A DNA stretch of 61,688 nt from the NCBI GenBank assembly GCA_002104905.1, contig MCFE01000530.1, positions 1-61,688 of the forward strand. Reading direction: 5' to 3'. The stretch comes from Basidiobolus meristosporus CBS 931.73. Lineage: Eukaryota; Fungi; Basidiobolomycota. Below, piece by piece: positions 24,724 through 61,688 of this stretch. The position numbers and the translations under genes are program-made. The notes beneath the pieces were generated by a model. That model did not search any database. It was not told where the DNA came from and worked only from the letters and a program-made list of their open reading frames with translations. Within the stretch, counting starts at the first letter, position 1. The number at the start of each line of letters is the position of its first letter.

Positions 24724-25242
24724 ATGCTCAGACAACAAGCACTCCCAATCGCCCTTCTCATGGCCGCATTGACCATGGGTGCCCAATTACATTCCACCAC
24801 TGACCCAGCTTCCCTCGGAAATGTGGCCAGCGGATCGGCAGCCAGCGAATCTCTTGGCCCGGCACAGAATCCCGGGGACGGATATACCGTCCGGGAGTTC
24901 AAGTCAAACAAGAAGGAAGACGCATCAAGGATCATGAGTCTTATTCTCCAGCAGATGACGAACAGCATTCACAAGAAGGAGTACCCCCCACTCTCAAACA
25001 TGCTTGACATGGATGATGCGAACACCGGTGCTGCCTCTGATCCGAAAGCTCCGCCTGTCGAGACCGGAGATGTAGGGGAGGGAGAAGACACCGCTGAGAT
25101 GAACCCTGAAGAAGCAGAACTGTGGGGACGATATGGTCGCTGGAGACGTGGATACTGGGGTCGAGGGCGCTTTGGGAGATACGGCGGGTATAATCGCTGG
25201 GGAGGTGGAAGGTATGGTGGGTGTTACGACTGGGACTGTTGA
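24724..25242 (+). CDS. Secreted precursor, 172 aa: signal peptide, acidic pro-region, Arg/Gly/Trp/Tyr-rich C-terminal peptide ending CYDWDC (copy 1, intact)
   Basis: ATG 24724 (MLRQQALPIALLMAALTMGA) preceded by TATATAA. Same length as, and conserved with, the intact paralog at 45862-46380. Confidence 0.85.
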   Translation: MLRQQALPIALLMAALTMGAQLHSTTDPASLGNVASGSAASESLGPAQNPGDGYTVREFKSNKKEDASRIMSLILQQMTNSIHKKEYPPLSNMLDMDDANTGAASDPKAPPVETGDVGEGEDTAEMNPEEAELWGRYGRWRRGYWGRGRFGRYGGYNRWGGGRYGGCYDWDC

Positions 25243-43353: not shown

Positions 43354-44259
43354 ATGTCGAGCGAACCAGAATCCAATTCAACTCTTACCAGTCAAGAAGC
43401 ACCTTCCGAGGTCGAGGAGACCGCCATCCCGCAGGATCCGGCGGCTTCCTGCGAAAATGAAGATCATCTCGATAAAGAACAGGGCACCCCTTCTCAAAAC
43501 AAGAAGGAGCCGTCGCCGAAGGCCGACAAGGAGTGGGTGAAAATGGAGAAAATCCCCGAGAAAAAGCCAGCTTCGGAAGGGAGGGACGCAAGGAAGAACG
43601 AAGCAACCACCAAGGAGCAGGAGGCATTTGAGGACATGTGGAACAAAGCTATCCAGGATTCACGTAGAAACAACAACCACCTAACACAGGAATCACACAG
43701 AAACAACCACCATCCAACCAAATCCCCAACCCCGAATCATCGACCGAGCACAAACAGGGACTCGCCCAAATCCAGGATTCCTCCAGCGGAAAATCCATCA
43801 GTCACCAAACGATTTTTGCGCCACGTCTTCCAAGCATTATTAGATCTGACCCATACGAACTACACCGCCTTTGCTGTCAACCTGTTGTGGCATGGCTTGG
43901 CTGTTTATTACCTTTCCCGCCCACGAAAGGCTCTCCTTACGAATGCCGTAGTGTCTGGTGGAAAGGGTGGGGTTCCCCCGTATGCTATTGACACGGTCAA
44001 ATTCCTGGGCGGGGTACACGCTGCCTGGGCTTTGCTGTCGCTCTTATCCTTCAGGATCAAAGACATCACTGCGCAGAAGGCGATCCTGCTGGCCTTCAGT
44101 CTGGCCAATTTCAGCCATTTGTACTTCACTGTTTCAGCGCTCGCCTCGGGAAGATGGAGGCTTTGGTTTACCAAGATTACCGCCGGGAGTAGCATAGTCA
44201 CCTTGATCAATATCGCATGCTACCTGGCATCAGTCAAAAAGAATGGCCGCTATCTATAA
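43354..44259 (+). CDS. Hypothetical membrane protein (disordered N-terminus, ~4 TM helices)
   Basis: 301-aa open frame with a charged N-half and four hydrophobic segments in the C-half. Family not recognised. Confidence 0.7.
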   Translation: MSSEPESNSTLTSQEAPSEVEETAIPQDPAASCENEDHLDKEQGTPSQNKKEPSPKADKEWVKMEKIPEKKPASEGRDARKNEATTKEQEAFEDMWNKAIQDSRRNNNHLTQESHRNNHHPTKSPTPNHRPSTNRDSPKSRIPPAENPSVTKRFLRHVFQALLDLTHTNYTAFAVNLLWHGLAVYYLSRPRKALLTNAVVSGGKGGVPPYAIDTVKFLGGVHAAWALLSLLSFRIKDITAQKAILLAFSLANFSHLYFTVSALASGRWRLWFTKITAGSSIVTLINIACYLASVKKNGRYL

Positions 44260-45861
44260 CCCTCCTGTTCTATTAGAATCCATTGTTTGTCGAGCGTTTG
44301 GCTGAACAACGGCACAATCCATCATCTAATTTTAGCGAGGCTTTATCTGAGCTCATGTGATACTTGGAAGGGCCTTTATCTGGAAATGATTAAAGTCAAG
44401 AGTCGATTGATGATTAATTTGTCGGAATCCAAGGTTCCCATTTAGAATCCCCAACTCCAAATATTTACCTATTGTCCATTGGCTCGAGGAATTGATAAAT
44501 TATTGCGCTATAAAGACCGACCATCTCGTAACTCAAACCTTTAGTTCTGGTTTGTTCGATTCCGTGCACCTACCCTACCCTACCCTACTCCACCAACTCC
44601 AAACGCGACAAACATGAGTTTTATGGACGATCTGAAGTCCGGGAAATTCTCGGTCTATGCACAATGGTATTTGTCCTCGGCACCTTACTGTCGCTGGAGT
44701 TGCACTAACCAAGCTTAACTTCGCGTTAGGGTTGCTATGCTGTCTGCCCTTCGTACGTACCAGCTTGAGCGTCCCACATTGTCTGGGAATCACTAACCGT
44801 CCTGGATTTTGCCCATTTAGTGTTGATCATCCTCGGGATCGTTGAATTCCTCAGAGTGCCGATTTTCTCTATTCTCGGCTTGTAAGTGTTGTCGCTATCC
44901 CTCGGCTCGGGCCACTCAGGTCGAACAAGACTAACCCGTCGAAACTCTAGCGTTTTCACTGTTTTGATCATTTTCATGGAGATCTCTTTCTTGACGAAGG
45001 TATGTTTGACTTTCCCTCAGATATGCCATGGCGTGGAAGCTTACCAAACGATTACAAAATATTGCAGTGTTGTCCTACTAGCCCTACGTTGTAAGTATAT
45101 GTACAAGCAAGATGCTATGAACGAGCATGATTTCTCAACAGGGAATTGACTTATTTTAGTGATAACTTCATCAAGAAGCTCTCGGGTAGCCATATCAGAG
45201 CTGGTGTCTACTTAGTGTAAGAATAGCTCGAATCTTACTACAAAATTAATTTACCAACCGCTGAATTGATCTCTAGCTTCGCCATCGTCATGTGGCTTTC
45301 TCTGATCCAACATTTCAACGTCCTGTTCATTCCCGCATTGACATTGACCTTCACTGCTATCTTCTACGGTAAGAATATACTAGGCTTGTCCTTTTTGCAT
45401 TGGAAGACACCGTCTAACGTGTTCCTCACAGCCACCGGTTACTTCAAAGGTCAAGAGAGAACCTCCACCTCCATGATGCCTGGCGCTGGAAGATTCGTCT
45501 CCATGGTCTAACTTGACGGTGAAGCAATCGCATATATTTCCGACAAATACTTTTCTTTGCACAGTATATACAGTTTATTTCATGTGAAATTTGATTTTCT
45601 CATAAATCTATATATATTTTCATACCATTGACATATCGTGTTTCATGTTGATAACGTCGAATCTATCTATATACTTGGGTTGCACATTGGGTGGTGAAAG
45701 GCAGTATAGTAAAAGGCAGTACCAGTCTTCGCGATTTACTCCCCCAAATATAAAAGACATGCTGATGTCAACAGTCCGTGCGTGATTGCATCTCCAGATC
45801 TATATTGGGAATGGACGATTCCGCACACTGCCAATGCCTGTGCAACTATTTATTTATCAAA

Positions 45862-46380
45862 TCAACAGTCCCAGTCGTAGCATCCGCTGTACCTTCTACC
45901 TCCCCACCAACCATACCCACCATATCTCCCGAAGCGTCCTCGGCCCCAGTATCCACGTCTCGAGCGAGCAAATCTTCCCCACAGCTCAGCTTCCTCGGGA
46001 TTCTCCTCAGAGATATCCTCACCCTCACCTCCACTCCTGGTCTCAACGGTGTGCTTCTTTGGTTCTGAGGCAGCTCTAGTTCGCGTGTCATCCATTTCGA
46101 GCATGTTCGAGAGTGGAGGATACTCCTTCTTTTGCATGCTGTTTGTCATCTGCTGAAGAATAAGGTTCATGATCCTTGATGCGTCTTCCTTCTTGTTTGA
46201 CTTATACTCCCGGACGGTATACCCGTCCCCAGGATTCTGTGCTGGACCAAGTGATTCGGTGGATACAGAGTTGGTGGCCACGTTCCCAGGAGCAGTTGGA
46301 ACAGCGATGGACTGCAGTTGAGCACCCATGGCCAGTGTGGCTATTAGGAGGGTGAATGGGATTGCTAATTGTCTGATCAT
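45862..46380 (-). CDS. Secreted Arg/Gly/Trp/Tyr-rich peptide precursor, 172 aa (copy 2, intact)
   Basis: MIRQLAIPFTLLIATLAMGA...NPEEAE-LWGRFARSRRGYWGRGRFGRYGGYGWWGGRRYSGCYDWDC. AATATAAAA upstream. Confidence 0.85.
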   Translation of the reverse strand: MIRQLAIPFTLLIATLAMGAQLQSIAVPTAPGNVATNSVSTESLGPAQNPGDGYTVREYKSNKKEDASRIMNLILQQMTNSMQKKEYPPLSNMLEMDDTRTRAASEPKKHTVETRSGGEGEDISEENPEEAELWGRFARSRRGYWGRGRFGRYGGYGWWGGRRYSGCYDWDC

Positions 46381-46910
46381 ACTGCAGGCCAGGTTCTGTA
46401 GCCTTAGCCTTCAGCAGGCCAAATATTTTATATTGACACCAGAATACATCATGTGGTTTGGTTGTCCTAGCTAGTTTAATGAAAACAGTATATGAGCTCT
46501 AGCGAGCTACTCCGAATCAGGGAAATCTCTGGTGTAAAGAAGAGTGACAGTAGTCTGATGAATTGACTGTTTTCTATTTAGTGCATCAGCATTTTATCCC
46601 ACCATTCTGTCATTATGGTGAACACATGATCGGACTGGAGACTCAGAGATTTGCTCTATACAGCTGATATATCATAAAGTTGAATATAGTGAAGTCTTGG
46701 CCGAAGTGTTTGCACACTAGAAGGAATTCAGTAGGTACGACTGTCGAGATGATATAAAAACGGGACATATACAAACCGCAGCACCCTTCTTGACAAAGTA
46801 TGCCAACATACATAAAACGTTGCAGTAGGTGCACGTTGTCCTGTATGCGACTATACACTGGTATTTTGTTCTATGGGATCAACCAATTACCTATCATTTG
46901 TAAATTGTAA

Positions 46911-47282
46911 GAGCTATGCCAAGCGCCAATTTGCCATATTGAGATTGTTTAGTATCCACCAGTGATAGTGTCGCGGCTGTTGCAACACTGCTGACAAGGA
47001 GTGGAAGCAACAGTGTTACATACGAGTGTTCTTTACCTCGTGGTAAATGATGTCGCGTAACTAATTTGAGCATAATAGTTGGTGTGATCTATCCATATAT
47101 CTATGCCAAGCGCTAATCTACCATATTGAGATTGTTTGGTGTCCACCAGTGTTAGTTATGTATCTATTGCAACACCACTGACAAGGAGTGGAAGCAACAC
47201 TGTTACATACGAATGTTCGATGCCTCGAAGTATAGGAACTCGTGTAACTAATTTGAGCATAATAGTGGGTGTGATCTATCCT
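46911..47282 (+). repeat. Two ~185-bp direct repeats in the divergent intergenic region (unit 1)
   Basis: Both copies share CTATGCCAAGCG.AAT...CATATTGAGATTGTTT...CTGACAAGGAGTGGAAGCAACA.TGTTACATACGA...GTAACTAATTTGAGCATAATAG.GGTGTGATCTATCC. Also seen at ~50030-50400, ~52595-52760, ~53768-53945 and ~57700-58030. Confidence 0.9.
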
Positions 47283-47382
47283 ATTTTGTGCTATGGTTCT
47301 GGATGATCAGCCAATATGTTCGAATGTACGATGGCCAGTTATTATTTAAGTGTGCAGCATGAAACATCCAACATCAATACAC

Positions 47383-48811
47383 ATGCGTTGCTTCAGCATC
47401 TACACTCTTACCTTCCTCGGCCTTACTGCTGTCTCCTGTGAGGTACTCACCTCCAACATCGTAGATCCATCCTTCAGGGTGGAGAATTACGACCCAGCCA
47501 CCGACTATTTCCCAGACAAAGTCACATGTACGAGCCACGCCATTTGTATTTACCATAAGATAGCGTATTAATGCATTCCATCCGTTTAGTTAACAATGAC
47601 ACCAAGCGTAGTATTGACTACAGAATGAACTGGAAGTATGTGCAGCTTTCACAGACTGATACGTACATCCTCTACCAGCGCGGGACTCCTCAGCCGGAAC
47701 GTGTCAGCAAGTACGACAAGTTCTTTGAAATCCCGCTGAATCGAGTGGACATTGCGAACTCGACTGCGGCTAGCTATCTAGATGTAAGTTACTATTGACA
47801 CGAATGATTTGGAAGCATTGTCTGACACATGGTTTATTCTAGATGCTAGGCTTAAGTGAGCGTATCGCATCTGTCGAGCCACAATCCTTCACGTCCCCGT
47901 GCATTGCCAACAACAGTTCAAGTGCAAATGTTGATGCACTTTTTTCCCCATCCATATATGCTGATGGAAACAAAACCATCAACATTGTTGAGTACACGTG
48001 GTACACTCCAGTTATGAGATCAGATCTACTCGAAGTTTATTCGGTCTTCTTCAACTTGGAGAAGACTGCCAGCAAGGTCGCACAAGAGATTGAGGACAAC
48101 TATAACTGCGTCAAGAGTGAGGTACAATCGATGACGGCCAAGACTACCCCAAAGATTGCCTGGGTTTATGTATTCGATGATTCACCCTCGGAGAGAGCAT
48201 ACGTTCACTACACTCCGAATCACCTACACTATCTGACGCAGGATAGTGGCGCACAATTACTGGTAGAGTTTGAGGAAAGTAGTACTCCTACAGCTACGGG
48301 ACATCCATTGAATGAGTTCCTTGAAGTCATCAAGGATGCAGATATTGTAGTGGATATGTCAGATTTCATTCACCTGAACATTACCTACCCTACCGTTGAT
48401 GAGGTACTGCAACTGTACAACTTGTCTGTGACTGACACACAGTACAAGTTCATCAGCAACAAGGCAGTATACCGCGTAGACAGAACCCAAACCAAGAGCG
48501 GCGATGCCGATTGGTTCTTCAATGCCGTTGTGATGGCTGATGCTGCACTGCAGGACACAGTGAATATGGTCCACCCTGGCTTCAAGAGTAACTACACTTT
48601 CCACTGGATGCGTAACCTCTTCGATGGTGAAAAGCTTAATGGCACGCAGCAAAGCACTTGTGCTGATCCCAAGGCGCCACTCGCAAATGTAGCCTACAAG
48701 TGTGATGCCAAGATCAAGACTGATACCAACGATGGGGTCAGCTTTTTCAGTCCCAACTCAGCTCTTGTTTACTTCGGGTTGGCTTCCGTTATAGCTGCCT
48801 ATTTGGGCTAG
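47383..48811 (+). CDS. Periplasmic-binding-protein-like (BtuF/CBA1-like) surface protein, copy 1, intact, ~435 aa
   Basis: Exons 47383-47527, 47590-47783, 47843-48811 join in frame. Signal peptide, DYFPDKV, YQRGTP, FEIPL, SPC, FFNLE, KIAWV, DSGA, ADIVVD, DWFF.AV..D, WMRN and a C-terminal hydrophobic (GPI-like) tail. Confidence 0.85.
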
Positions 48812-48989
48812 TGTATTACACACCACCAATACATCAACTATTACTGTGAGTAACTTCTCATAATCGAAGGCAGTTTAATAAATAATTGTATGTCATAACA
48901 TTACGACGATCTCATTGATTTCACAATCTGGATTCAAGTCTTGTCATTATTCACAGCTCTGAGCTAAATTTGTACGGGCGTATAATTTC

Positions 48990-49499
48990 ATTTATTTATC
49001 GAACTGGTCGTCCCAGTTGTAGCGCCCGTCATATCTTTTACCTCCTCACCGACTATTATTGTCGTATCCCCCAAAGCGTCCTCGAATCTAGCATCCGTAT
49101 CTTCCCCACTTAGTCACCCTTCCTCGGCATTCCTCACTAAGCCAGCCTCGCCTCATCTCCACTATTGAGGTCCATGGCCGGCTCCTGAGAATCAGTGACC
49201 GGATTAGCCCCATCTTATCCATATCAAGTATGCTAGAGTTACTCTTTGTTGGGCATACTCTTCGTCGTCCGCTGGGATATAAGGTTCATGATCCTTTACG
49301 CATCTTCCTTCTTTTATGACTTGAGCTCCTGGGCGGTGTATCCGTTCCCAGAATTCTTTGCTGGACTAAGTAATTCGGTGGATGTTGATCATCTGGCCAC
49401 GTTCCCAGGAGCAGCTGAGTCAGTGGTAAACTGCAGTTGAGCACCAATGGCCAGTGTGGCTATTATGAAGGAGAATGGGATTGCCAGTTGTCCGATCAT
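48990..49499 (-). pseudogene. Peptide-precursor pseudogene (unit 2)
   Basis: ATG 49499 retained. Premature TGA at ~49388, and TAG/TGA at Trp positions of the tail. Confidence 0.85.
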
Positions 49500-50501
49500 A
49501 TTCCAGGTCAGATTCTGAGACAGCAGCTCTTAGCAGAACAAAGAAATAAGCTCCAATAAGCCACTATGAGCTAGACAACTCTCTTGAGCGAAAGTCAGTA
49601 ACGGTAGTCTGATGAATTGGTTGTTTTCTGTTTAATGCACCAGCACTTATGATGAACACATGATCGGACTGAAGACTCCAAGATTTGCACTATACGGCTA
49701 ATATATCATGAAAATAAATATAGTGAAGTCTCGGCCGAAATATTTCCGCACCAGATGGAATTTGGTAGGTACGCTTGCTAAGGTGAAATGAAAAGTGGTC
49801 ATATACAAACTACAGTTCTCTTCCTGACAAAACATGCTCAGTCAGTGCACGTAGCCGATGTTTGTGAGGTGTATAGCTTTCAAAATTGTAGTTGTCACTA
49901 AGCGAACAGTAGAGTAGAGCCAAAAATGGTGACCGAATACGCTGTCTCCATCTATTGTTCTGCATGCGACTATACACTGGTATTTTGTTCCGTGGGACCA
50001 GCCAATTACCTATCATTTGTAATTTGGAAGAGCTATGCCAAGCGCCAATTTACCATATTGAGATTGTTTAGCATCCACTAGTGATAGCGTCGCGGCTGTT
50101 GCAACACTGCTGACAAGGAATAGAAGCAACAGTGTTACATACGAGTGTCCTTTCCCTCGTGGTAAATGATGTCGCGTAACTAATTTGAGCATAATAGTTG
50201 GTGTGATCTATCCATATATCTATGCCAAGCGCCAATCTACCATATTGAGATTGTTTGGTGTCCACCAGTGTTAGTTATGTAGCTGTTGCAACACCACTGA
50301 CAAGGAGTGGAAGCAACACTGTTACATACGAATGTTCGATGCCTCGAAGTATAGGAATTCGTGTAACTAATTTGAGCATAATAGTGGGTGTGATCTATCC
50401 TATTTTGTGCCATGGTTCTGGATGATCAGCCAATATGTTCGAATGTACGATGGCCAGTTATTATTTAAGTGTGCAGCACGAAACATCCAACATCAATACA
50501 C

Positions 50502-51987
50502 ATGCGTTGCTTTAGCTTTTACACTCTTACTTTCCTCGGCCTTACTGCAGTCTCCTGTGAGGTACTCACCTCCAACATCGTAGATCCATCCTTCAGGGTG
50601 GAGAATTACGACCCAGCCACCGACTATTTCCCAGACAAAGTCACATGTACGAGTCACTTCGTTTGTATTCACACTGAGATAGCGTATTAATGCATTCCAT
50701 CCGTTTAGTTAACAATGCAACTGAGAGTCGTATCGAATACAGAATGAATTGGAAGTATGTGCAGCTTTCATCTACTAATAGGTACATCCTCTACCAGCGC
50801 GGGACTCCTCAGCCGGAACGTGTCAGCAAGTATGACAAGTTCTTCGAAATCCCGCTGAATCGAGTGAGCATTGCAAATTCGACTGCGGCTAGCTATCTAG
50901 ATGTAAGTTTCTACTGGCATGAATGATTTGGAAGCATTGTCTGACACATGGTTTATCCTAGATGCTAGGCCTAGGTGAACGTATCGCATCTGTCGAGCCA
51001 CAATCCTTTACATCCCCGTGCATTGCCAACAACAGTTCGAGTGCAAATGTTGATGCACTCTTTTCCCCATCCATATATGCCGATGGAAACAAAACCATCA
51101 ACCTTGTTGAGTATACGTGGTACACTCCAGTTATGAGATCAGATCTACTCAAAGTTTATTCGGTCTTCTTCAACCTGGAAAAGACTGCCAACAAGATCAC
51201 ACAGGACATTGAAGGCAACTACAACTGCGTCAAGAGCGAGGTACAATCGATGACGGCTAAGACAACGCCAAAGATTGCTTGGGTCTACATAACCGATGCC
51301 TACACCTTCTCCTCGAACATATCCTACGTCTACTACACTCCGAACTACTTATACTCTCTGACGAAGGATAGTGGCGCTCAACTAATGATGGAATTCGAGG
51401 AAAATTATAGTATTACAGCATTCGGATATCCATTAAATGAGTTCCTTGAAGTCATCAAGGATGCAGACATCATAGTGGAGATGTCAAGTTTCATTCACCA
51501 GAATATCACCTACCCCACAGTTGATGAGGTACTGCACCTGTACAACCTGTCTGTGACTGACACACAATACAAGTTCATCAGCAACAAGGCAGTATACCGC
51601 GTAGACAGAACCCAAACCAAGAGTGGCGATGCCGATTGGTTCTTCAACGCCGTTGTGATGGCTGATGCTGCACTGCAAGACACAGTGAATATGGTCCACC
51701 CTGGCTTCAAGAGTAACTACAATTTCCACTGGATGCGTAACCTTTTCGATGGTGAAAAGCCTAATGGCGCGCAGCAAAGCACTTGTGCTGATCCCAAGGC
51801 ACCACTCGTGAATGTAGCCTACAAGTGTGATGCCAAGATCAAGACTGATACTAACGATGGGGTCAGCATTTTCAGTCCAAGCTCAGCTCTTGTTTACTTC
51901 GGGTTGGCTTCTGTTGTGCTGCCTATTTGGGCTAGTGCATTACACATCATTAATACGTCTACCATTACTGTAAGTAACCTATTATAA
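50502..51987 (+). CDS. BtuF/CBA1-like protein, copy 2; 1-bp deletion alters the C-terminal anchor
   Basis: Exons 50502-50646, 50709-50902, 50962-51987. GTTGTGCTGCC replaces GTTGTAGCTGCC at ~51917, giving the tail VVLPIWASALH... instead of VVAAYLG*. Confidence 0.8.
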
Positions 51988-52169
51988 TCGAAGGTAGTCT
52001 AATAAATAATTGTAAGTCATAACATTATGTCGATCTCATTGATTTGATGATCTGGCTTCAAGTCTTGTCATTATTCACAACTCTAAGTTGGTGTTGTGTG
52101 AGTGTATTGCTGCATGTTCGAAAGAGTATCACAGTGATTATACCGAATTACTGGTTGTTCACTTATCAA

Positions 52170-52529
52170 ACTAGCAGTCTTTGAACCTGCCATACCCTTG
52201 ACCTTCCCACCGAGCATAGTTAGTATATATCCCGTGGCGTCCTCAAACCTAGTAACCATGTCTCCAGCGACCGTATCTTCCCCACTTAGTAATGTTTCCT
52301 TAAAATTCCTCTCTAAATTGCCCTTATCCTCCGCTCAACTTTTGTCGTCGATGGTGGTATCCCTGTATCGAGGACTGAATGAGCTCTTGTCTTTTAAATG
52401 TCAAGTATGTTTGAGAGTGGAGAATACTCCTTCTGGTACATGCTGCTTGTCGTTTGGTGGTAAATAAGGCTCATGGTTCGTTACGCGTCTTCCTTCTTGC
52501 TTGACTTGAGCTCCTGGACGGTGCATCCG
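52170..52529 (-). pseudogene. Peptide-precursor fragment (unit 3)
   Basis: Homologous to the C-terminal two thirds of the 45862-46380 gene; 5' part deleted. Confidence 0.75.
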
Positions 52530-52849
52530 ACTACACACTATAATATCATTCTATCTGACCAGCAAAATTTCTTTCATTTGAGAGAGTAATGTCAAGTACG
52601 GATCTACCATATAGAGATTGTTATCCAACAGTAGTATTGATTTGGAGATCGTAACACCACTGATAAGGAAAACAAACAACAGTGTCACTTGCATATGATC
52701 TTAGCCTATTGTTAAAGAAACTCATGTAGCTCATTTGATCACAGCAGTTGATGTCTAAATTGTCCGACGTTTCTTGTGGATCAGCTAATGTGTTTGAAGG
52801 CTATGATGTTATGTAAGTGTTCAGCATACTACATACAACATCAGTACAC

Positions 52850-53296
52850 ATACGGTGCTTATGCACCTACATTCTGCCTTTCCTCGGCCTTACTACCGTT
52901 TCTTGTAAGAAACTCACCTCCAACATTGTAGATCCAGCATTCAAGATAGAGCTTTACGACTCAGCCTCCAACAATTTCCCAGACAAAGTCACATGTATGA
53001 GTCACTTAATTCGTAGCAACGCTAAGTGAACTTACTGATCCATTCCATTCATTTAGTTGACGCCCCAATGGAGAATCGTATTTATTACCAAAAGAGCTGG
53101 AAGTATCTACAGCTTTTCTATTAGACTTGAATCTTTTATCAGCGCGGCACTCCTCGGCCTTCTCAATGCAATATGGTACCACTTCAGCTTCTTGGTTTAT
53201 AAGTGTGATACTAATGATGGAGTTGGCTTTTTCAACTCAAGGTCGGCTCTTGTTTACTCGTTTTCAGCTTCTATTGTAGCCATCTATCTGGGCTAT
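52850..53296 (+). pseudogene. BtuF/CBA1-like pseudogene, copy 3
   Basis: Start codon reads ATA at 52850. Exon 1 is recognisable; a large deletion fuses exon 2 to the last ~40 codons (YKCDTNDGVGFF). Confidence 0.85.
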
Positions 53297-54048
53297 GGTA
53301 TTACGCGTCTTCACTATACTGTCTATCACAGCATCAAGCTATTTTAGTCTCAAGTTATCTAATAAATAGTTGAATGTAATATCATTGTAGTTCATCCCTA
53401 CAATTTCGAACTTCTCCTCAAGCATTGTCTTTGCTCACTGGTCCGGCATAGATATATGTGGATGTATAGGTATGAAATAATTGTTGGTTCATTTATTTAT
53501 GAAGCCCGCTATACCTTCTACCTTACAAGTCTAAGTATTTTTACCGTCAATGCCAGGTCTGACCCTCTATATGGCTGAGATATCATGAAGTTGAATATAG
53601 TGAAGTCTTAGCCGAGGTATTTCAAGTTTCGAGATGACAACTGTCAGCAAGAGAGCAGTGAAGTAGGCCCAAAAACGATGGCTGAATATGCAGTCCCCAT
53701 ATGTTATTCTCTATGTGGCTATCCACCAGAATCTTGTTCTGTCCGCCCGTCTTCCATTTGGAACAGAAATGCCAAGCGCCAATCTACCATATAGAGGTTG
53801 TTTAGTATCCACGAGTGATAGCGATGTGGCTATTACATCATCACTGACAAGGAGTGGAAGCAACAGTGTTACATATGAGTGTTCTTTTCCTCGCGATAAA
53901 TGATCTCGTGTAACTAATTGGGGCGTAACAGATGGTGCAATCTATCCTAATTTCTGCGATAGTTCTGGATGATCAGCCAATGTGTTCGAATGTACAATGA
54001 TCAGATTGCATTTAAATGTGCAGCACGAAGCATCCAACATCAATACAC

Positions 54049-55392
54049 ATGCGTTGCTTCAGCATTTGCACTCTTACTTTCCTCGGCCTTACTGCTGTCT
54101 CTTGTGAGGTACTCACCTCGAACATCGTAGATCCATCCTTCACAGTAGAGAATTATGACCCAGCCACCGACTATTTCCCAGACAAAGTCACATGTACAAG
54201 TCACGTCATTTGTATTCACACTGAGATAACCTACTAATGCATTCCGTCCATTTAGTTAACAATGCAACAAAGAGCCGTATCGAATACAGAATGAACTGGA
54301 AGTATGTGCAGCTTTCAAGTATTCACAAGTATATCCTCTACCAGCGTGGGACTCCTCAACCAGAGCGAATCAGCCAATACGACGAGTTCTTTGAAATCCC
54401 GCTGAATCGAGTGGAAGTTGTGAACTCGACTGCGGTTAGCTATCTTGATGTGAGTTCTTACTAATACGAATGATTTAGAAGCATTTCCTGACACATGGTT
54501 ATCATAGATGCTAGGCCTAGGTGAGCGTATCGTGTCTGCCGAACCACAATACCTCACATCCCCGTGCATTGCCAATAGTAATTCAGGGGTAAACGTTGAT
54601 GCACTTTTTTCCCCAGACAGATATATCGTTGGGAACAAAACCATCCACATTACTGAGGATCCGTGGTACAGTCCACTTGTGAGATCAGATTTACTCAAAA
54701 TTTATTCTGTCTTCTTCAACCTGGAGAAGACCGCCAATAAGATCACACGGGAGATCGAGGACAACTATAACTGCGTTAAGAGCGAGGTAGGGTCGATGAA
54801 GGCCAAGACAATGCCAAAGATTGCTTGGATCTATAGATCCGATTATTACAAATATCACGGCTCGGATGTGTACTACGTTTACTCCACAACGAGCTACTTG
54901 GGCTCTCTGATGCAGGATAGTGGCGCACAATTAATAGAGTTTGACGAAGATAACGGCGCTTTGGCTCACGGATATAAAAATTTGAATGAGTTCCTAGATG
55001 TCATCAAGGACGCAGACATTGTAGTGGAAATATCAGATTTCATTCACCAGAACATTACCTACCCTACGGTTGATGAGGTATTGCAACTATACAACCTGTC
55101 CGTGGCTGACACACAATATAAGTTCATCAGCAACAAGGCAGTATACCGTGTAGATAGAATACAAACCAAGGGCGGTGATGTCGATTGGTACTTCAATGCA
55201 GTTGTGATGGCTGATGCTGCTCTGCAAGACACAGTGAATATGGCTCACCATGACTTCAAGAGTAACTACACTTTCCACTGGATGCGTAGCCTTTTCGACG
55301 ACGAGAAGCTCGATGGTCCGAAGCACAGCACTTGTATTGATCCCAAGGCGCCACTAGCAAACGTGGCCTACAAATGTGATGCCAGGATCTAG
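54049..55392 (+). CDS. BtuF/CBA1-like protein, copy 4; premature stop removes the hydrophobic tail
   Basis: Three exons in frame. TAG at 55390-55392 sits where paralogs have AAG, while the downstream anchor-coding frame is still recognisable. Confidence 0.75.
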
Positions 55393-55599
55393 ATAATTAC
55401 TAACAATGGGATTGGTTTTTTAATCTATGTTCGACTGTTGCTTACTTCGGGCTGGCTTCTCTTGCAGCTACCTGTCTGAAATAGTGTAATTTATGTATTC
55501 ACCATAGTGCCTGCTACTGTATCTAACCTCACTGTATCCATCAAACGATCAACCATAATGTCGAATTATTTAGAAAGTAACAAATAACTTCATGATTCA

Positions 55600-55932
55600 G
55601 TTTACTTGGGATTCTTCGAGTCGCTTTTGTGGTATATGGTTGGATACTTGGAAGCAGAGATATCATCAGTTCTCCTATTTATAAATTCCTTCTGCATGCT
55701 TTGAGTCATTTGATGGTAAGTAAGGTTCATGATCCTCGACATATCTTGCTTAACTGGGACTCCCGGAGGATATATCCGTCCTCGGGGTTTTGTGTAGGAC
55801 TAAATGAATCGGTAGATACAGGTTCGGTGTCTATATCTTTTTGAGTGTCTTGGTCAGTTATGGAATGCAGTGAAATACCCGTGGTCAGTGTGGCTATTAG
55901 GAGGTTGAGTGGGATTGCTAGTTGGCTGATCT
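55600..55932 (-). pseudogene. Peptide-precursor fragment (N-terminal part)
   Basis: Reads ISQLAIPLNLLIATLTTG...QNPEDGY; start codon lost and C-terminus missing. Confidence 0.75.
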
Positions 55933-56755
55933 TATCGCAGGTCAGGTTCCACGGCATTGGCCCTCATGACAAAGGCAATGAGCTACCCTTAATCAAGTAG
56001 AGATATTTGGAATACAATTGGGTCTGTAGCAAAGATTGACGGGAGTTTGATGGATCAAATATTCATATCTCAGTGTTGTTCACGCATCTGATAGATCATG
56101 ACCTGCGAAAAAGCTTTGGATTGTATTGTTGCTGCGACGAATATATGGAGAAGTAATACACCAGACAATTACCGCCAGTACTAAGCCTGACATTCAAATA
56201 GCGTGGCTACTCACAATAACAGTAAGATTAGCTAACATGTCATATTATGAATAGTCTCTGAAAGGTGGTGTAGGAGTGATTAGCAGAGCAAGTACAAGAA
56301 TCTTTTGGCTCTCATTATGGACCTAACGTTTCCGGTGTGTACTGTCAGTATAATGGGTTCATTCAAAGGGTAATAGTACATATAATTGGTGGCTGTGGAC
56401 AGCCTAACAATAAAGCGGAACCAAAAACTCTAGCCTAGAGGTGGGAGCTGCAGCGTCCAAGTGATTCTATTTTCCACTGGATGCATAAATACCAGTGATG
56501 GTCTTGGCTCTTGCAATACAAACTCAGCCCTTATTTAATTCGGATTAGCTAGGCTAGTATATTTCAAATATTCTCTGTACGGGCTATTACTTTATGTAAC
56601 CTATATGTCAAAGGTAATCTAACAACATTTCATGATTTAATTTCGAGAATCGTCTTTGTTCTTTGATCCGAGATAGATATGTGTGGATGTATGGATGCCG
56701 CACTACCAGCATGATGAAAGGAACATCACAAGTGTGTAGTGAAATGACTGGTTCA

Positions 56756-57266
56756 TTTATTTATGAAATCAGCAGTCCTAGTCGTAGCTCCCGCCATATC
56801 TTCTACCTCCCCACCGACTATACCCACCATATCTCCCAGTATTCACGTCTCCAGCGACCATAATTGCCCCCAAAGCTCAGCTTCCTCGGGGTTGATCTCA
56901 GAAATACCCTCACCCTCACCTTCATCTCCACCTTTGCTGCCTATAGTGGGATCCTTTGGATCGGAGGCAGTACCAGTCTTCACCTCATCTACGTCAAGCA
57001 TGTTCGAGAGTGGGGTATACTCCTTCTTTTGCATGCTGTTTGTCATCTGCTGGAGAATAAGGTCCATGATCCTTGATGCGTCTTCCCTCTTGTTTGACTT
57101 GAACTCCCGGATGGTATATCCATCATCGCGATTCTGTGCTGAGCAAAGGGACTCGCTGAAGGGCCACCTTTCTGAGGGAAGCTGGGTCAGTGGTAGACTG
57201 CAGCTGAGCGCCCATGACCAGTATGGCTAGTAGAATAGAGAATGGGCTTGCTAGTTGGCTGATCAT
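56756..57266 (-). pseudogene. Peptide-precursor pseudogene (unit 5)
   Basis: ATG 57266 retained. A deletion frameshift after the signal peptide, a +1 shift at ELWG, a deletion inside the tail and TGG>TAG in CYDWDC. Confidence 0.85.
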
Positions 57267-58129
57267 ATCCCAGTTCGAGTTCTGAGGCATTAGTTTAAAG
57301 CAGAACAAACTTTTGTTATAGCACTAGAATATATCATATGGTTTGATAAGCCTAGTCAGTTTAATGAAAACGGTATATGATCCCTAGCGAGCTACTCTGG
57401 ATCAGGCAATTCTCTGGTGTAAAGAGGAGTGACGGTTTTCCGATGAATTCGTTGTTTTCTATTCAATATACCAGCGTTTTATCACACGATCCTGTCTTTA
57501 TGATGAGTATATGATCAGACTAAGGATTCAGATATTTGTTATACGTACAATTGGATATAAAGAACTCGAAATGGTAACTGTTGGCAAAAATTTAGGCCAA
57601 AAATCGTGGTCAAATATACTGTCTCCACAGGATACTTTGTGTGTGACTATACACTGGAATATTGTTCTATCTGACCAACCAATTACCTATTATTTGGAAA
57701 AGCGATGTCAAGCACCAATCTACCATATTGAGATTGTTTGGTATTCACCAGTGATAGTGATGTAATTACTGCAACATCACCGATAAGGAATGGAAGCAAC
57801 ATTGTTACATACAGAGCGTTCCATGCCTCGTGGTAAATGATCTTGTGTAACTAACTTGAGCACAATAGTTGGTGTGATCTATCCTATTTTGCGCGATAGC
57901 TCTGGGTAAACTATTGCAACACCACTGACAAGGAGTGGAAGTAACACTGTTACATACGAATGTTCGATGCCTCGAAGTATAGGAATTCGTGTAACTAGTT
58001 TGTGCATAATAGTGGGTGTGATCTATCCTATTTTGTGCCATGGTTCTGGATGATCAGCCAATATGTTCGAATGTACGATGGCCAGTTATTATTTGAGTGT
58101 GCAGCACGAAACATCCAACATCAATACAC

Positions 58130-59567
58130 ATGCGTTGCTTTAGCTTTTACACTCTTACTTTCCTCGGCCTTACTGCTGTCTCCTGTGAGGTACTCACCTC
58201 CAACATCGTAGATCCATCCTTCAGGGTGGAGAATTACGACCCAGCCACCGACTATTTCCCAGACAAAGTCACATGTACGAGTCACTTCATCTGTATTCAC
58301 ACTAAGATGGCTTACTAATGCATTCCGTTCGCTTAGTCAATAATGAAACAGAGAGCCGTATCGAATACAGAATGAATTGGAAGTATGTGCAGCTTTCACC
58401 GACTAATAGGTACATCCTCTACCAGCGCGGGACTCCTCAGCCGGAACGTGTCAGCAAGTATGACAAGTTCTTCGAAATCCCGCTGAATCGAGTGAGCATT
58501 GCAAATTCGACCGCGGCTAGCTTTTTAGATGTGAGTTACCATTGATGGCTCATTTGATAACATCGATTTGGTAGCAATTTCTGACATGCTTATTCTAGAT
58601 GCTTGGCCTAGGTGAACGTATCGTATCTGTCGAGCCACAATACTTTACATCCCCGTGTATTGCCAACAACAATTCAGGGTCAAATGTTGGAGCCTACTTT
58701 GCCCCAGGTGTAAATGCTGATAGGAACGATACCATCAACATCTATGAGTTGACGATGTCCAGGCCACTCACGAGGTCGGATTTGCTCAAGACTTATTCGG
58801 TTTTCTTTAACCTGGAGAAGACCGCCAACAAGATCACACAGGACATTGAGGGCAACTATAACTGCGTCAAGAGCGAGGTACAGTCGATGACGGCTAAGAC
58901 AACGCCAAAGATTGCTTGGGTCTATATAATCGATTATTTAACCTCAAGAATATCATACGTTCTCTACACTCCAAACTACCTACACTATCTGATGCGGGAT
59001 AGTGGCGCACAATCAATAATAGAGTTTGAGGAAAACAATGGTATTTCAGCTTTTGGGAATCCATTGAATGAAGTCCTAGAAGTCATCAAGGATGCAGACA
59101 TCTTAGTAGATATGTCAAGTTTCATTCACCTGAACATTACCTATCCTAAGGTTGATGAGGTACTGCACCTGTACAACCTGTCTGTGGCTGACACACAATA
59201 CAAGTTCATCAGCAACAAGGCAGTATACCGCGTAGACAGAACCCAAACCAAGAGCGGCGATGCCGATTGGTTCTTCAATGCTGTTGTGATGGCTGATGCT
59301 GCACTCCAGGACACAGTGAATATGGTCCACCCTGGCTTCAAGAGTAACTACACTTTCCACTGGATGCGTAACCTTTTCGATGGTGAGAAGCTGAACGGTA
59401 CGCAGCAAGGCACTTGTATCGATCCTAAGGCGTCACTTGCAAATGTGGCATACAAGTGTGACGCCAAGATCAAGACTGATACCAACGATGGGGTTAGCCT
59501 TTTCAGTCCCAGCTCAGCTCTTGTTTACTTCGGGTTGGCTTCTGTTGTAGCTGCCTATTTGGGCTAG
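58130..59567 (+). CDS. BtuF/CBA1-like protein, copy 5, intact
   Basis: Exons 58130-58274, 58337-58530, 58599-59567 in frame; ends VVAAYLG*. Confidence 0.85.
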
Positions 59568-59786
59568 TGCATTACACATCACCAATATAGCAACTATTAC
59601 TGTAGGTAACCGGTTATAATCGAAGGCAATCTCATAAATAATTTTATATCGTAACATTATGGCGATCTCATTGATTTCACGATCTGGATTCAAGTCTTGT
59701 CATTATGCACAGTTCTGAGCTAGATTAGTGTGTGCGTGTTGGGGACAAGTATCACAGCGATATGAAATTACTGATTCATTTATTTA

Positions 59787-60026
59787 TCAAACAGGTAGTC
59801 CCAGTTGTAGTACCAGCCGTATCTCCCAAAACGTCCTCGAGCCTAGTAATCATGATTTCACTTAGTAACCTATCCATAGCGTTTGTGCTGGTCTGAGTGA
59901 TTCGGTGAATGTCAACCTAATAGCAATGTTGCTGAGAGGAGGTGGACCAATGGTGAAATGTAATTTTGCACCCATTGTCATGGTTACCATTGAGAGTGTG
60001 AATGGGATTGCTAGTTCTCGGATTAT
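59787..60026 (-). pseudogene. Peptide-precursor remnant (unit 6)
   Basis: Start codon reads ATA. The signal-peptide region is fused by deletion to the tail remnant. Confidence 0.75.
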
Positions 60027-60800
60027 GTACTTGCTAGGGTTCAGCCGTATCTATCAAGAGGCTTTATGTTGGGATGGGAGCACCTCTTGATGCTTAGTTA
60101 GCGGGGAAGGATTAATGAGATGGCACATATGTCATACCGGAAGGCATATTATCAGAGCTTTTCTTCTAAGCTGAGGTATACTATGATTTGAGTTGAGGGG
60201 AGTAAAATAAGTCTAACGGGTAGGCTTGTACGTAGTCTTTCCTGAGGTATAAAGAGCCAGAGTCGTTATAAATATCAGCAAAAGCCCCAGTAGTCGCAGA
60301 GGGCCACAGCTAGTGTATATATAAGTTCAGATATGCAAGTAGACGTTTATCTAGATGAAGGCTGTAAGCTATACTACAAATCGTTTTCACCCAAGGCAAT
60401 GGCTATAATATTCATCCAATCTATCTCATTAACTGTCAGCTTTTTGGAAGTTGTTCCTCGGTGCAGTGAATTGATTTTCCATAGATGGTTATTTGACATC
60501 CACGAATGGTGCTTGCAAGATTTGTAGCCCCAATTGGCTCGTAAAGAAACGTATCTAACTTGTTTCATCACATCATCAACGGAATCTATCCTAATTAGTG
60601 GGATGTTTCCGGTGGACCAACTAATGTGTTCCAATGTGTAAATGGCCAGATGATATATCTTGCTACTTGTGTAAGTAATTTGATCACAATAGTTAGTGCC
60701 CTATTTGTCCATATTTTTGGATGATCAGCCAATGTGTTCGAATGTACAATGGCCAGATATTATTTAAGTGTGCATCACGAAACATCCAACATCAATACAC

Positions 60801-61688
60801 ATGCGTTGCTTCAGCATTTGCACTCTTACTTTCCTCGGCCTTACTGCTGTCTCTTGTGAGGTACTCACCTCGAACATCGTAGATCCATCATTCACAGTAG
60901 AGAATTATGACCCAGCCACCGACTATTTCCCAGACAAAGTCACATGTATGAGCCATTTCATTCGTAGCAGCACTACGAGAGCTTACTGATCATTTCTGTT
61001 CGTTTAGTTAATATCGAAACCGAGCGTAGTATTGAATACAGAATGAACTGGAAGTACGTGCAGCTTTCAAGTACTGATAAATATATCCTCTACCAGCGCG
61101 GGACTCCTCAGCCGCAACGTATCAGCCAATACGACAAGTTCTTTGAAATCCCACTGAATAGAGTGGGTAATGTTGGCCCTACAGAAGCTAGCTATCTAGA
61201 TGTAAGTTTCCACGGTTGGCTAATTTCATAAAGGTGATACAGAGGCGTATTCTAACTCATGGCTCATTCAAGACGCTTGGTCTAGTTGAGCGTATCGTAT
61301 CTGCCTATCCACAGTACTTTACGTCTCCATGCATTGCCAACAACAGTTTTGACGAGAATGTTGATGCCTACTTTACCCCAGACATAGATGTTGATGGAAA
61401 CAAAACCATCAACATCTATGAGGAGGTAACCGCCAGTCCACTTACGAAATCAGACCTACTCAAGGTTTATTCAGTCTTCTTCAACCTGGAGAGGGTTGCC
61501 AACAATGTCACACAAAGCATTCACGACAATTATGACTGTATCAAAAACGAGGTACAGTTGATGGCGGACAAAACCACGCCAAAGGGTTGCTTGGGTCTAT
61601 TTGATCGATGCTATCGACGCAATATCCTATATGCACTGCACTCCTGGCTACTTAAGTCATTTGATGCAGGATAGTGGCGCTCAATTGA
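60801..61688 (+). pseudogene. BtuF/CBA1-like copy 6, runs off the window; +1 frameshift at ~61585
   Basis: Exons 60801-60945, 61008-61201, 61273-end. AAG-G-GTT-GCT-TGG carries an extra G relative to paralogs, which could be an assembly error. Confidence 0.7.

What the first reader, a model, noticed from the sequence alone, without database searches (positions are those of the whole stretch)
45790..61688. Tandemly amplified divergent module: cationic peptide precursor head-to-head with a BtuF/CBA1-like surface binding protein
Seen: every one of the six binding-protein genes has a peptide-precursor gene or remnant on the opposite strand upstream of it (45862-46380, 48990-49499, 52170-52529, a tiny remnant ~53490-53525, 55600-55932 plus 56756-57266, 59787-60026). 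Where both promoters survive (units 1, 2 and 5) they share a ~0.9-1.0 kb divergent intergenic region. The unit period is 3119 bp between the first two ATGs and then varies by deletion. Established: type III periplasmic-binding folds (BtuF/FhuD, algal CBA1) bind cobalamin, siderophores or heme, and early-diverging fungi retain B12-dependent enzymes. Inference: a co-regulated module in which the peptide lyses or disarms bacteria and the surface protein captures released corrinoid or iron, or alternatively a peptide plus its self-protecting receptor. I know of no description of this pairing. The simpler alternative is that the peptide gene was a passenger in the duplicated unit.
Basis: partly seen in the sequence, partly recalled or inferred. 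Interest (0 to 1): 0.85.

Follow-up and report, generated by a model that had tools for sequence, protein, structure and literature searches.

The report
CBA1-like gene array with decaying peptide neighbours
A gut-associated fungus (Basidiobolus meristosporus) has tandemly multiplied a gene for a vitamin-B12/iron-type surface binding protein; the small cationic peptide gene copied along with it has decayed in every extra copy, so it looks like a passenger and not a working partner.

Summary

**What is there**
- The window is a whole scaffold of Basidiobolus meristosporus CBS 931.73.
- From 45848 to its end it carries six tandem units of about 3.1 kb.
- Each unit has a 3-exon gene for a secreted binding protein with a hydrophobic C-terminal tail. 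On the opposite strand upstream lies a gene, or a remnant of one, for a 172-aa peptide precursor: signal peptide, acidic pro-region, and a +7 tail rich in Gly, Arg, Tyr and Trp.

**The binding protein**
- It belongs to the eukaryotic CBA1 (cobalamin acquisition protein 1) family.
- The predicted fold is class III periplasmic-binding (pLDDT 88).
- 12 of 16 CBA1 hallmark residues are identical and 3 more similar. The pocket residue E396 is replaced by Phe.
- Four copies evolve under purifying selection (dN/dS 0.22-0.30), with two variable patches.

**The peptide**
- Only 1 of the 7 peptide copies or remnants in the array is intact.
- That copy carries a stop codon just before the cationic tail in the second assembled haplotig.
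- A second intact peptide gene (24724-25242; dN/dS 0.19) has no binding-protein neighbour.
- Three other Basidiobolus CBA1-like genes have no peptide neighbour.
- One transcriptome-like run covers the binding-protein exons and shows no coverage of the intact peptide gene.

The six pairings therefore derive from one ancestral adjacency. The ligand, corrinoid or siderophore/heme, is unresolved. Other first-stage notes of this scan on this window already flagged the variable patches and the peptide family.

The parts
45862..46380 (-). Peptide precursor gene, unit 1. It is the only intact copy in the array (172 aa): signal peptide, acidic pro-region (net -7), and a 38-aa tail rich in Gly/Arg/Tyr/Trp (net +7) that ends in CYDWDC.
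   Evidence: ORF. Composition and charge. dN/dS of 0.19 against the solo paralogue. The copy in the second haplotig has TGG>TAG at codon 134.
46381..47358 (.). Divergent intergenic region of unit 1. Only the BP-proximal part (about 46927-47358) is conserved between units. It contains a 187-bp tandem duplication.
   Evidence: Sliding identity. Repeat families D2, D6 and D8.
47359..48811 (+). CBA1-like binding protein copy 1, intact. Exons 47359-47527, 47590-47783 and 47843-48811 give 443 aa. It has an N-terminal signal-like segment, 9 N-glycosylation sequons and a 16-aa hydrophobic C-terminus.
   Evidence: Splice sites read. Spliced translation. The same junctions appear in the contigs of run X3. 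Hydropathy.
48990..49499 (-). Peptide pseudogene, unit 2. It is 71% identical to the intact copy, with 4 in-frame stops and several frameshifting indels.
50502..51987 (+). CBA1-like copy 2. The reading frame is open, but a shift in the last residues replaces the tail end ...AAYLG with a 22-aa extension. The copy in the second haplotig has an out-of-frame segment.
52175..52529 (-). Peptide pseudogene, unit 3, 5' truncated and carrying stops.
52832..53293 (+). CBA1-like copy 3, a remnant. Exon 1, part of exon 2 and the C-terminal end remain; the start codon is lost and the middle is deleted.
53506..53523 (-). An 18-nt trace of the peptide tail (encodes GRRYSG), unit 4.
   Evidence: 17/18 nt match to 45884-45901
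54049..55392 (+). CBA1-like copy 4 (database protein P0002, 407 aa). A stop codon before the hydrophobic C-terminal tail would give a soluble secreted form, or marks a young pseudogene.
   Evidence: dN/dS of 0.25-0.30 against the other copies.
55686..55930 (-). Peptide pseudogene fragment, first of the two that lie between BP copies 4 and 5.
56755..57266 (-). Peptide pseudogene, unit 5, with 11-nt and 17-nt deletions and a stop. It is annotated as the truncated protein P0007, which lacks the cationic tail.
58130..59567 (+). CBA1-like copy 5, intact (435 aa from the conserved ATG).
59853..60026 (-). Peptide pseudogene fragment, unit 6. Only the 5' 58 codons remain and the ATG is lost.
60801..61688 (+). 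CBA1-like copy 6. It runs off the scaffold end and has a frameshift near 61585.
   Evidence: The annotated model P0003 ends in the shifted frame.
24724..25242 (+). Second intact peptide precursor gene (P0004, 74% aa identity), standing alone next to retrotransposon debris with no binding-protein gene beside it.

Best explanation
A ~3.1-kb unit was amplified in tandem by unequal crossing-over in the Basidiobolus meristosporus lineage. It held a CBA1-family gene and the small secreted-peptide gene that lay head-to-head with it.

**The binding protein**
- It has a class III periplasmic-binding fold of the BtuF/FhuD/CeuE type.
- It has a signal peptide and N-glycosylation sequons. Its short hydrophobic C-terminus is most simply read as a GPI or tail anchor.
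- Selection kept several copies, and two patches differ between them. One patch starts two residues after the conserved pocket tryptophan. I infer dosage gain and/or a widened ligand range for scavenging bacterial metabolites.
- The most likely ligands are corrinoids, because the organism has B12-dependent enzymes and algal CBA1 is required for B12 uptake. I put corrinoid at about 45%, siderophore/heme at about 35%, and other ligands at the rest.

**The peptide**
- The extra peptide copies were never needed. They decayed at about the neutral rate and left one intact copy at the array's left edge.
- The peptide is a separate lineage-specific gene, with a second intact paralogue 21 kb away.
- Its product is probably cleaved after the conserved RR to release a cationic, glycine/aromatic-rich peptide of about 30 aa with a C-terminal CxxxxC loop. 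It is plausibly antimicrobial.

**Shown:** array anatomy, fold, family membership, selection pattern, pseudogenisation, splicing.
**Inferred:** anchor type, ligand, peptide processing and activity.
For: **Array anatomy.** Described; the left edge lies at 45848, 14 nt past the peptide stop codon.

**Family**
- phmmer gives 739 relatives, from early-diverging fungi, dictyostelids, Acrasis and algae.
- P0036 and P0039 match the N-terminal strings of CBA1-HMM hits in Sayer 2023.
- The motifs FFNxE, PxxAW and DWF and the invariant D are kept.

**Fold.**; TM 0.72-0.78 to eukaryotic 'periplasmic binding protein' models.

**Selection**
- BP copies: dN/dS 0.22-0.30 and dS 0.27-0.49, with the two patches at 0.4-1.1.
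- Peptide 1 against the solo copy: dN/dS 0.19, dS 0.77.

**Peptide decay**
- Stops, frameshifts and truncations in the peptide remnants.
- They are 68-76% identical to the intact gene. That is about what neutral drift predicts for the BP dS values.
- A nonsense allele of peptide 1 in the ~99% identical second haplotig.

**No obligate pairing**
- The solo peptide gene.
- Three other Basidiobolus CBA1-like loci without a peptide gene.

**Expression.** Run X3 covers only BP exons, at word depth around 100 with GT..AG joints exactly at the predicted junctions, and has zero depth over 45700-46487.

**B12 use.** Orlowska 2021 Table S1.
Against: - Pocket residue E396 of CrCBA1 is Phe in all array copies, and Phe or Ser in all four Basidiobolus paralogues examined. 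A non-B12 ligand is therefore quite possible. Land plants keep CBA1-like genes without using B12 (Sayer 2023).
- No permease or ABC partner and no B12 or iron gene lies in the window.
- X3 is only inferred to be RNA. Logan contigs cannot prove that a transcript is absent, and the culture condition is unknown.
- Absence of the peptide from other species rests on annotated proteins only. Short genes are often not annotated, and no tool allowed a DNA search of other Basidiobolus genomes.
- A one-peptide, many-receptor relationship is not excluded by the decay of the extra peptide copies.
Confidence: 0.7

Rival explanations
1. Functional two-gene module. The peptide and the binding protein would be co-regulated from a bidirectional promoter; the peptide would lyse or disarm bacteria and the surface protein would capture the released corrinoid or iron chelate.
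For: - Head-to-head arrangement with about 1 kb between the start codons in unit 1.
- Both proteins are predicted to be secreted.
- The organism lives among gut bacteria and uses B12.
- The intact peptide gene is under purifying selection.
Against: - 6 of the 7 peptide copies or remnants in the array are dead, while BP copies persist under selection.
- Peptide 1 carries a nonsense allele in the second haplotig.
- Only the BP-proximal half of the intergenic region is conserved between units.
- The solo peptide gene and three solo CBA1-like genes show that each gene is kept without the other.
- BP transcripts are seen without peptide transcripts in X3.
- All six pairings descend from one event.
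Confidence: 0.07
2. Peptide plus self-protecting receptor. The binding proteins would bind and neutralise the cationic peptide at the producer's surface, and the variable patches would track peptide variants.
For: The variable patches in the BP, and the charge-complementary architecture of the peptide precursor.
Against: - There is only one peptide variant in the array and one elsewhere, against at least four diversified BPs.
- The precursor already carries its own neutralising acidic pro-region (-7 or -12 against +7).
- The BP retains the CBA1 small-ligand pocket motifs W255, W394 and F395.
- Class III binding proteins are known for chelates and tetrapyrroles, not for peptides (established knowledge; matches).
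Confidence: 0.03
3. The array proteins are siderophore or heme receptors, or sensors, and not corrinoid binders. The fold and anchoring are the same, but iron acquisition drove the amplification.
For: - The best solved-structure matches are catecholate and hydroxamate siderophore and heme binders: CeuE, YiuA, FhuD, ShuT, IsdE.
- The family profile hits 'iron complex transport substrate-binding' proteins.
- E396 is lost.
- A CBA1-like domain fused to a class C GPCR in AFDB shows that the fold can serve as a sensor.
Against: - The closest characterised relatives by sequence are algal CBA1 proteins, which are needed for B12 uptake.
- 3 of the 4 proposed pocket residues are kept.
- The organism has several B12-dependent enzymes and no known B12 importer.
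Confidence: 0.35
4. Assembly artefact: the repeats or the broken genes would come from mis-assembly or sequencing errors rather than biology.
For: - The array runs off the scaffold end.
- A ~99% identical second contig exists.
- Single-base frameshifts, as in copy 6, could be errors.
Against: - The units differ by 5-50% from one another, so they are not collapsed or duplicated reads.
- The same order of units, the same stop in copy 4 and the same deletions appear in both contigs.
- Independent DNA-run contigs tile the region with few differences.
- The peptide remnants carry many lesions each.
Confidence: 0.02

Closest known systems
CBA1, cobalamin acquisition protein 1 (Bertrand 2012; Sayer et al. 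2023, PMC10828217)
   Same: - It belongs to the same sequence family. My hits P0036 and P0039 match the N-terminal strings of sequences in the paper's list of CBA1-HMM hits.
- It has a signal peptide, a size of about 440 aa, and at most one C-terminal hydrophobic segment.
- It keeps the FFNxE, PxxAW and DWF motifs and has a BtuF-like predicted fold.
- It occurs in a B12-using early-diverging fungus, as the paper reported for five other fungi.
   Different: - E396, proposed to lie near the B12, is Phe. The neighbouring W207 is Leu and E206 is Asp.
- It is only about 25-31% identical to non-Basidiobolus members.
- It is amplified into a tandem array of at least 6 units with variable patches.
- Function in any fungus is untested. 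Basidiobolus does not appear in the paper's supplement.
Bacterial class III (cluster A) substrate-binding proteins, Pfam PF01497: BtuF, FhuD, CeuE, ShuT, IsdE
   Same: - Two-lobe fold joined by a long backbone helix (H186-210 in the model).
- Foldseek E of about 1e-8 and TM 0.5-0.7 normalised to the target.
- A profile-level sequence link.
   Different: - It is eukaryotic, with introns, glycosylation sequons and a membrane or GPI-type tail.
- It has an extra N-terminal beta-rich segment of about 90 aa.
- P0002 itself does not reach any Pfam threshold.
- No ABC permease partner lies nearby.
Precursors of cationic antimicrobial peptides with an anionic propiece, and glycine/aromatic-rich AMPs (for example nematode NLP/CNC peptides and arthropod glycine-rich peptides; from my own knowledge, not tested here)
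   Same: The order signal peptide, acidic pro-region, dibasic site, cationic Gly/Arg/Tyr/Trp-rich C-terminal peptide; and charge balance between the propiece and the tail.
   Different: - There is no detectable homology to any family. Only compositional look-alikes appear.
- Relatives were found only in B. meristosporus.
- Activity is untested.
Ordinary tandem gene arrays in which a neighbouring gene is co-amplified and then pseudogenised
   Same: - A fixed unit with a sharp left edge.
- Differential survival of the two genes within the unit.
- High identity confined to the retained gene and its promoter.
   Different: Nothing essential.

Membership tests
CBA1 family (as defined by the HMM of Sayer et al. 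2023) | Significant sequence similarity to proteins that the CBA1 HMM accepts | tested here: met
   - P0002 against P0036 (Heterostelium album): E 7.5e-31.
- P0002 against P0039: E 1.4e-29.
- Both contain the exact N-terminal strings printed for the Heterostelium and Conidiobolus coronatus CBA1 hits in the paper's supplement.
- This is a transitive link. The algal CBA1 sequences themselves were not compared.
CBA1 family (as defined by the HMM of Sayer et al. 2023) | The 16 highly conserved residues: K78, P118, L136, E206, F214, F215, N216, E218, P251, V253, W255, G289, W394, F395, E396, D408 | tested here: inconclusive
   - Positions were mapped by motif context on the 55-sequence alignment.
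- 12 are identical.
- E206>D, V253>I and F395 as F or Y are conservative changes.
- E396>F is not met. 39 of 55 family members have E at that position.
CBA1 family (as defined by the HMM of Sayer et al. 2023) | BtuF-like two-lobe predicted structure | tested here: met
   AF2 model with pLDDT 88.4 and pTM 0.88. Foldseek matches.
CBA1 family (as defined by the HMM of Sayer et al. 2023) | Secretory signal peptide | tested here: met
   An N-terminal hydrophobic segment...YTLTFLGLTAVSC, is seen in the sequence and the hydropathy profile. No dedicated signal-peptide predictor was available.
CBA1 family (as defined by the HMM of Sayer et al. 2023) | Required for, or binds in, vitamin B12 uptake | not testable with these tools
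   This needs ligand-binding or knockout experiments. The organism has MetH, MM-CoA mutase and RNR class II according to Orlowska 2021.
Pfam PF01497 Peripla_BP_2 (class III substrate-binding proteins) | Match to the Pfam model above the gathering score | tested here: not met
   - P0002, P0001, P0003 and the exon translations give no PF01497 match.
- 12 of 55 family relatives do match.
- The family profile finds PF01497 proteins at E of 1e-57 to 1e-63.
- The protein is therefore a superfamily relative by profile and fold, not a direct Pfam member.
Co-regulated divergent gene pair or functional module | Adjacency and orientation conserved in independent loci or genomes | tested here: not met
   - All the pairs in the array derive from one amplification.
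- L002, L003 and L004 (B. ranarum and B. meristosporus paralogues) have no peptide gene within the fetched flanks.
- The solo peptide gene at 24724 has no BP neighbour.
- Limit: other genomes could be checked only around annotated proteins.
Co-regulated divergent gene pair or functional module | Both partners retained under selection | tested here: not met
   Only 1 of the 7 peptide copies or remnants in the array is intact, and it has a nonsense allele in the second haplotig. Four BP copies have dN/dS of 0.22-0.30.
Co-regulated divergent gene pair or functional module | Correlated expression | tested here: inconclusive
   One transcriptome-like run (X3) shows spliced BP transcripts and zero depth on the peptide gene. 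It is a single unknown condition, the data are contigs only, and the run type is inferred.

The most novel reading that the evidence does not exclude
The surviving peptide gene, together with its solo paralogue, acts with the diversified set of surface CBA1-like proteins in a one-to-many relationship. For example, the peptide could permeabilise gut bacteria while an array of receptors with different pocket-edge loops captures the various corrinoids or chelates released. A fungus would then have built a 'kill and scavenge' locus around a B12-acquisition protein.
Probability: 0.05. Interest if true: 0.7.

Novelty: new member of a known kind. Interest (0 to 1): 0.3.

Why it matters
CBA1 is the only eukaryotic non-animal protein shown to be needed for B12 uptake, and its role in fungi is untested. 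This locus shows a lineage-specific array of at least six CBA1-like genes, with variable patches next to a pocket residue, in a gut-dwelling fungus that uses B12. It offers natural variants for asking what fungal CBA1-like proteins bind. The proposed peptide/receptor module would have been a new kind of system, but the evidence points to ordinary co-amplification followed by decay. The peptide family itself is real, conserved, cationic and lineage-restricted. It deserves a simple activity test, but that is a separate finding.

Tried and rejected
- **Pfam scans.** Scans of the single exons and of the annotated proteins gave nothing.
- **Solved-structure sequence search.** phmmer of exon 3 against PDB sequences gave only chance hits.
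- **Single-sequence AF2.** The model of P0002 was useless (pLDDT 32). It was redone with a 55-sequence alignment.
- **Peptide homology.** The search found only B. meristosporus proteins. The ESM Atlas gave only compositional look-alikes, glycine-rich proteins with scores of 0.81 or less.
- **RNA run search.** A search with 5.9 kb listed no RNA run. A search of any run type gave two DNA runs and one that behaves as RNA.
- **Findings index.** Searches for the peptide sequence and for methionine synthase were blank.
- **Horizontal transfer from bacteria as the origin of the BP.** Considered and rejected. The gene has introns, and its nearest relatives are fungi and other eukaryotes.
- **The peptide as a RiPP or dikaritin-type precursor.** Considered and rejected. 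It has no repeated core peptides, and no UstYa or tyrosinase-type neighbours.
- **Not possible with these tools.**
  - A DNA search of other Basidiobolus genomes.
  - A direct comparison with the algal CBA1 sequences. They are not held as references, and I did not type them in.
  - Mapping of the variable patches onto model coordinates.

Full report
**Source and context**

The window is an entire 61,688-bp scaffold of Basidiobolus meristosporus CBS 931.73 (GCA_002104905.1). The annotated proteins P0002 and P0003 lie on a contig of exactly this length. The left third of the scaffold is rich in transposons: DDE_Tnp_4, RVT_1 and rve matches, plus ORFs that read as Copia-like gag/integrase. The genes just upstream of the array are unrelated: Duc1, CPDase, a Cg6151-P domain gene and several orphans. 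No ABC permease and no B12 or iron gene is present.

**Checking the observation**

Direct-repeat analysis finds one family repeated six times, with start spacings of 3119, 2348, 1199, 4081 and 2671 bp. I worked out the gene model of copy 1 from the sequence:
- exons at 47359-47527, 47590-47783 and 47843-48811;
- GT..AG introns of 62 and 59 nt;
- a 443-aa product.

The annotated model P0002 (copy 4) uses the same junctions. So do the contigs of run X3.

tblastn with the spliced protein and with the 172-aa peptide precursor places every element. Projecting each peptide copy onto the intact gene shows the lesions. These are in-frame stops and frameshifts at 48990-49499, 5' truncation plus stops at 52175-52529, and an 18-nt trace at 53506-53523. 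There is also a frameshifted fragment at 55686-55930, 11-nt and 17-nt deletions plus a stop at 56755-57266, and a 5' fragment at 59853-60026.

Status of the BP copies:

| Copy | Status |
|---|---|
| 1 and 5 | intact |
| 2 | open, but with a changed tail end |
| 4 | stop before the hydrophobic tail |
| 3 | internally deleted, start codon lost |
| 6 | frameshifted near 61585 and cut by the scaffold end |

The array's left boundary is at 45848, 14 nt beyond the peptide stop codon.

**What the binding protein is**

- *Sequence family.* An exhaustive phmmer search with P0002 finds 739 relatives. Most are about 440-470 aa. Named members come from B. ranarum, Calcarisporiella, Umbelopsis, Mortierella, Acaulospora, Mycoemilia, Coemansia, Acrasis, Heterostelium and a chlorarachniophyte. 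Several are labelled 'periplasmic binding protein'.
- *Link to bacterial binding proteins.* A profile of 55 members reaches bacterial PF01497 proteins at E of 1e-57 to 1e-63. 12 of the 55 members match PF01497 directly. P0002 itself does not.
- *Fold.* With that alignment AF2 gives a confident model (pLDDT 88.4, pTM 0.88).
  - Its best solved matches are class III binding proteins: CeuE, YiuA, FhuD-type, ShuT.
  - In Swiss-Prot models the matches are BtuF, IsdE, FecB and archaeal lipoproteins.
  - In AFDB clusters the top matches are eukaryotic 'periplasmic binding protein' models at TM 0.72-0.78.
- *Link to CBA1.* Sayer et al. 2023 (PMC10828217) showed that CBA1 is required for B12 uptake in Chlamydomonas and Phaeodactylum. 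They found CBA1-like genes in early-diverging fungi that have METH.
  - Two of my hits, P0036 and P0039, contain the exact N-terminal strings of the Heterostelium and Conidiobolus entries in their supplement.
  - Of their 16 conserved residues, the array copies keep 12 exactly and 3 with conservative changes.
  - E396, one of the four residues placed around B12, is Phe. It is Phe or Ser in all four Basidiobolus paralogues examined.
- *Predicted location.* The only hydrophobic segments are the N-terminal signal-like stretch and the last 16 residues, and there are 9 N-glycosylation sequons. Surface anchoring is an inference from this.
- *B12 use by the organism.* B. meristosporus is listed with MetH (2), MM-CoA mutase (1) and RNR class II (5) by Orlowska et al. 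2021, Table S1.

**Evolution of the two genes**

Pairwise Nei-Gojobori estimates for BP copies 1, 2, 4 and 5 give dS of 0.27-0.49 and dN/dS of 0.22-0.30. All four have therefore been under purifying selection for most of their history. Two patches, alignment columns 131-172 and 222-272, reach 0.4-1.1. The second patch begins two residues after the conserved pocket tryptophan (W255 in CrCBA1 numbering). This agrees with another first-stage note (s1-190911).

The intact peptide gene and a second intact copy at 24724-25242 are both exactly 172 codons long, and dS is 0.77. dN/dS is 0.19 overall and is similar in the pro-region and the tail. The peptide is thus a real, constrained gene. Both copies share the same layout: an acidic pro-region (net -7 and -12), a conserved RR, and a +7 Gly/Arg/Tyr/Trp tail ending in CYDWDC.

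The other peptide copies in the array are 68-76% identical to the intact one. That is about what neutral divergence predicts for the BP dS values, so they seem to have been free of selection since each duplication. Between units 1 and 2 the BP promoter-proximal ~430 bp and exon 1 are 96-98% identical, while the peptide half of the unit is 46-76% identical.

**Second haplotig**

Contig MCFE01001028.1 (L001) is 98.9% identical to 43400-56231 and 98.7% identical to 57917-61688. It has the same unit order and the same stop in copy 4. In it the 'intact' peptide gene carries TGG>TAG at codon 134, directly before the cationic tail. This explains the 133-aa annotated protein P0005. Its BP copy 2 has an out-of-frame segment. 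The last working array copy of the peptide is therefore itself dispensable in one assembled version.

**Linkage elsewhere**

The peptide family was found only in B. meristosporus proteins. Three other Basidiobolus CBA1-like loci show no peptide-like sequence within the fetched DNA: P0008 and P0011 in B. ranarum, and P0009 on another B. meristosporus scaffold. The solo peptide gene has no BP neighbour.

**Expression**

No RNA run was listed for the locus. Of the runs that hold it, X1 and X2 cover genes and spacers evenly and are DNA.

X3 covers only BP exons, at word depth of about 40-160. It has pieces that end exactly at 47527 and start exactly at 47843, and joints with GT..AG ends at the predicted junctions. 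It therefore behaves as a transcriptome. It has zero depth across 45700-46487, which holds the intact peptide gene, and a faint 187-nt piece at 49024-49209.

This is one unknown condition, and contigs cannot prove absence. It still gives no support for co-expression.

**Conclusion**

The anatomy is real. The six pairings are one ancestral adjacency copied by tandem amplification. Selection retained the CBA1-like genes and let the co-amplified peptide genes decay. Each gene type is also maintained on its own elsewhere.

The most likely function of the array is capture of a bacterial small-molecule nutrient at the fungal surface, with copy-number gain and some diversification of the binding site. 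I favour a corrinoid, with siderophore or heme as a serious alternative. The peptide is a separate, lineage-specific secreted cationic peptide whose activity is untested. A one-to-many functional link cannot be excluded, but nothing found here speaks for it.

Noticed in passing
L001:2467-2982 (MCFE01001028.1), homologous to window 45865-46380: The second, ~99% identical assembled copy of the locus has a TGG>TAG nonsense change at codon 134 of the otherwise intact peptide gene, immediately before the cationic tail. Whether this contig is an allele or a recent segmental duplicate is not known.
   Followed up: yes
window 46836-47402 and 49955-50521: A 187-bp tandem duplication lies inside the divergent intergenic region (repeat families D2, D6 and D8, about 60% identical arms). 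It is present in units 1 and 2, just upstream of the strongly conserved BP promoter-proximal block.
   Followed up: no
window 24724-25242: A second intact copy of the peptide precursor sits at the boundary between a transposon-rich stretch of 36-44% GC and a gene-bearing stretch of 49-54% GC, next to Copia-like and RT fragments. Only its coding region is similar to the array copy.
   Followed up: partly
AFDB cluster hit A0A1Y2D0J3: An 1179-aa fungal model has a CBA1-like domain (TM 0.75, residues 310-697) in a protein annotated with a class C GPCR profile. This suggests that the fold is also used as an extracellular sensor domain in early-diverging fungi.
   Followed up: no
proteins P0010, P0012, P0013, P0014, P0020, P0027, P0032: Many long relatives (800-1500 aa) contain 2-4 CBA1-like stretches. 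Most come from metagenomes and one from Amorphochlora. They are either true multi-domain proteins or fused gene models over tandem arrays, which would mean tandem amplification of this family happens elsewhere too.
   Followed up: no
window 49024-49209: The transcriptome-like run X3 has one low-depth (5.9) 187-nt contig here. It lies 200-400 nt downstream of the BP copy 1 stop codon and inside peptide pseudogene 2. It could be a long 3' UTR or read-through, or residual transcription of the pseudogene.
   Followed up: no
window 1-24000: This part is rich in transposons: a DDE_Tnp_4 transposase ORF (4005-4931), RT, integrase and DUF4100 fragments on the minus strand (9405-13434), and a Copia-like gag/integrase (20130-22039).
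   Followed up: partly
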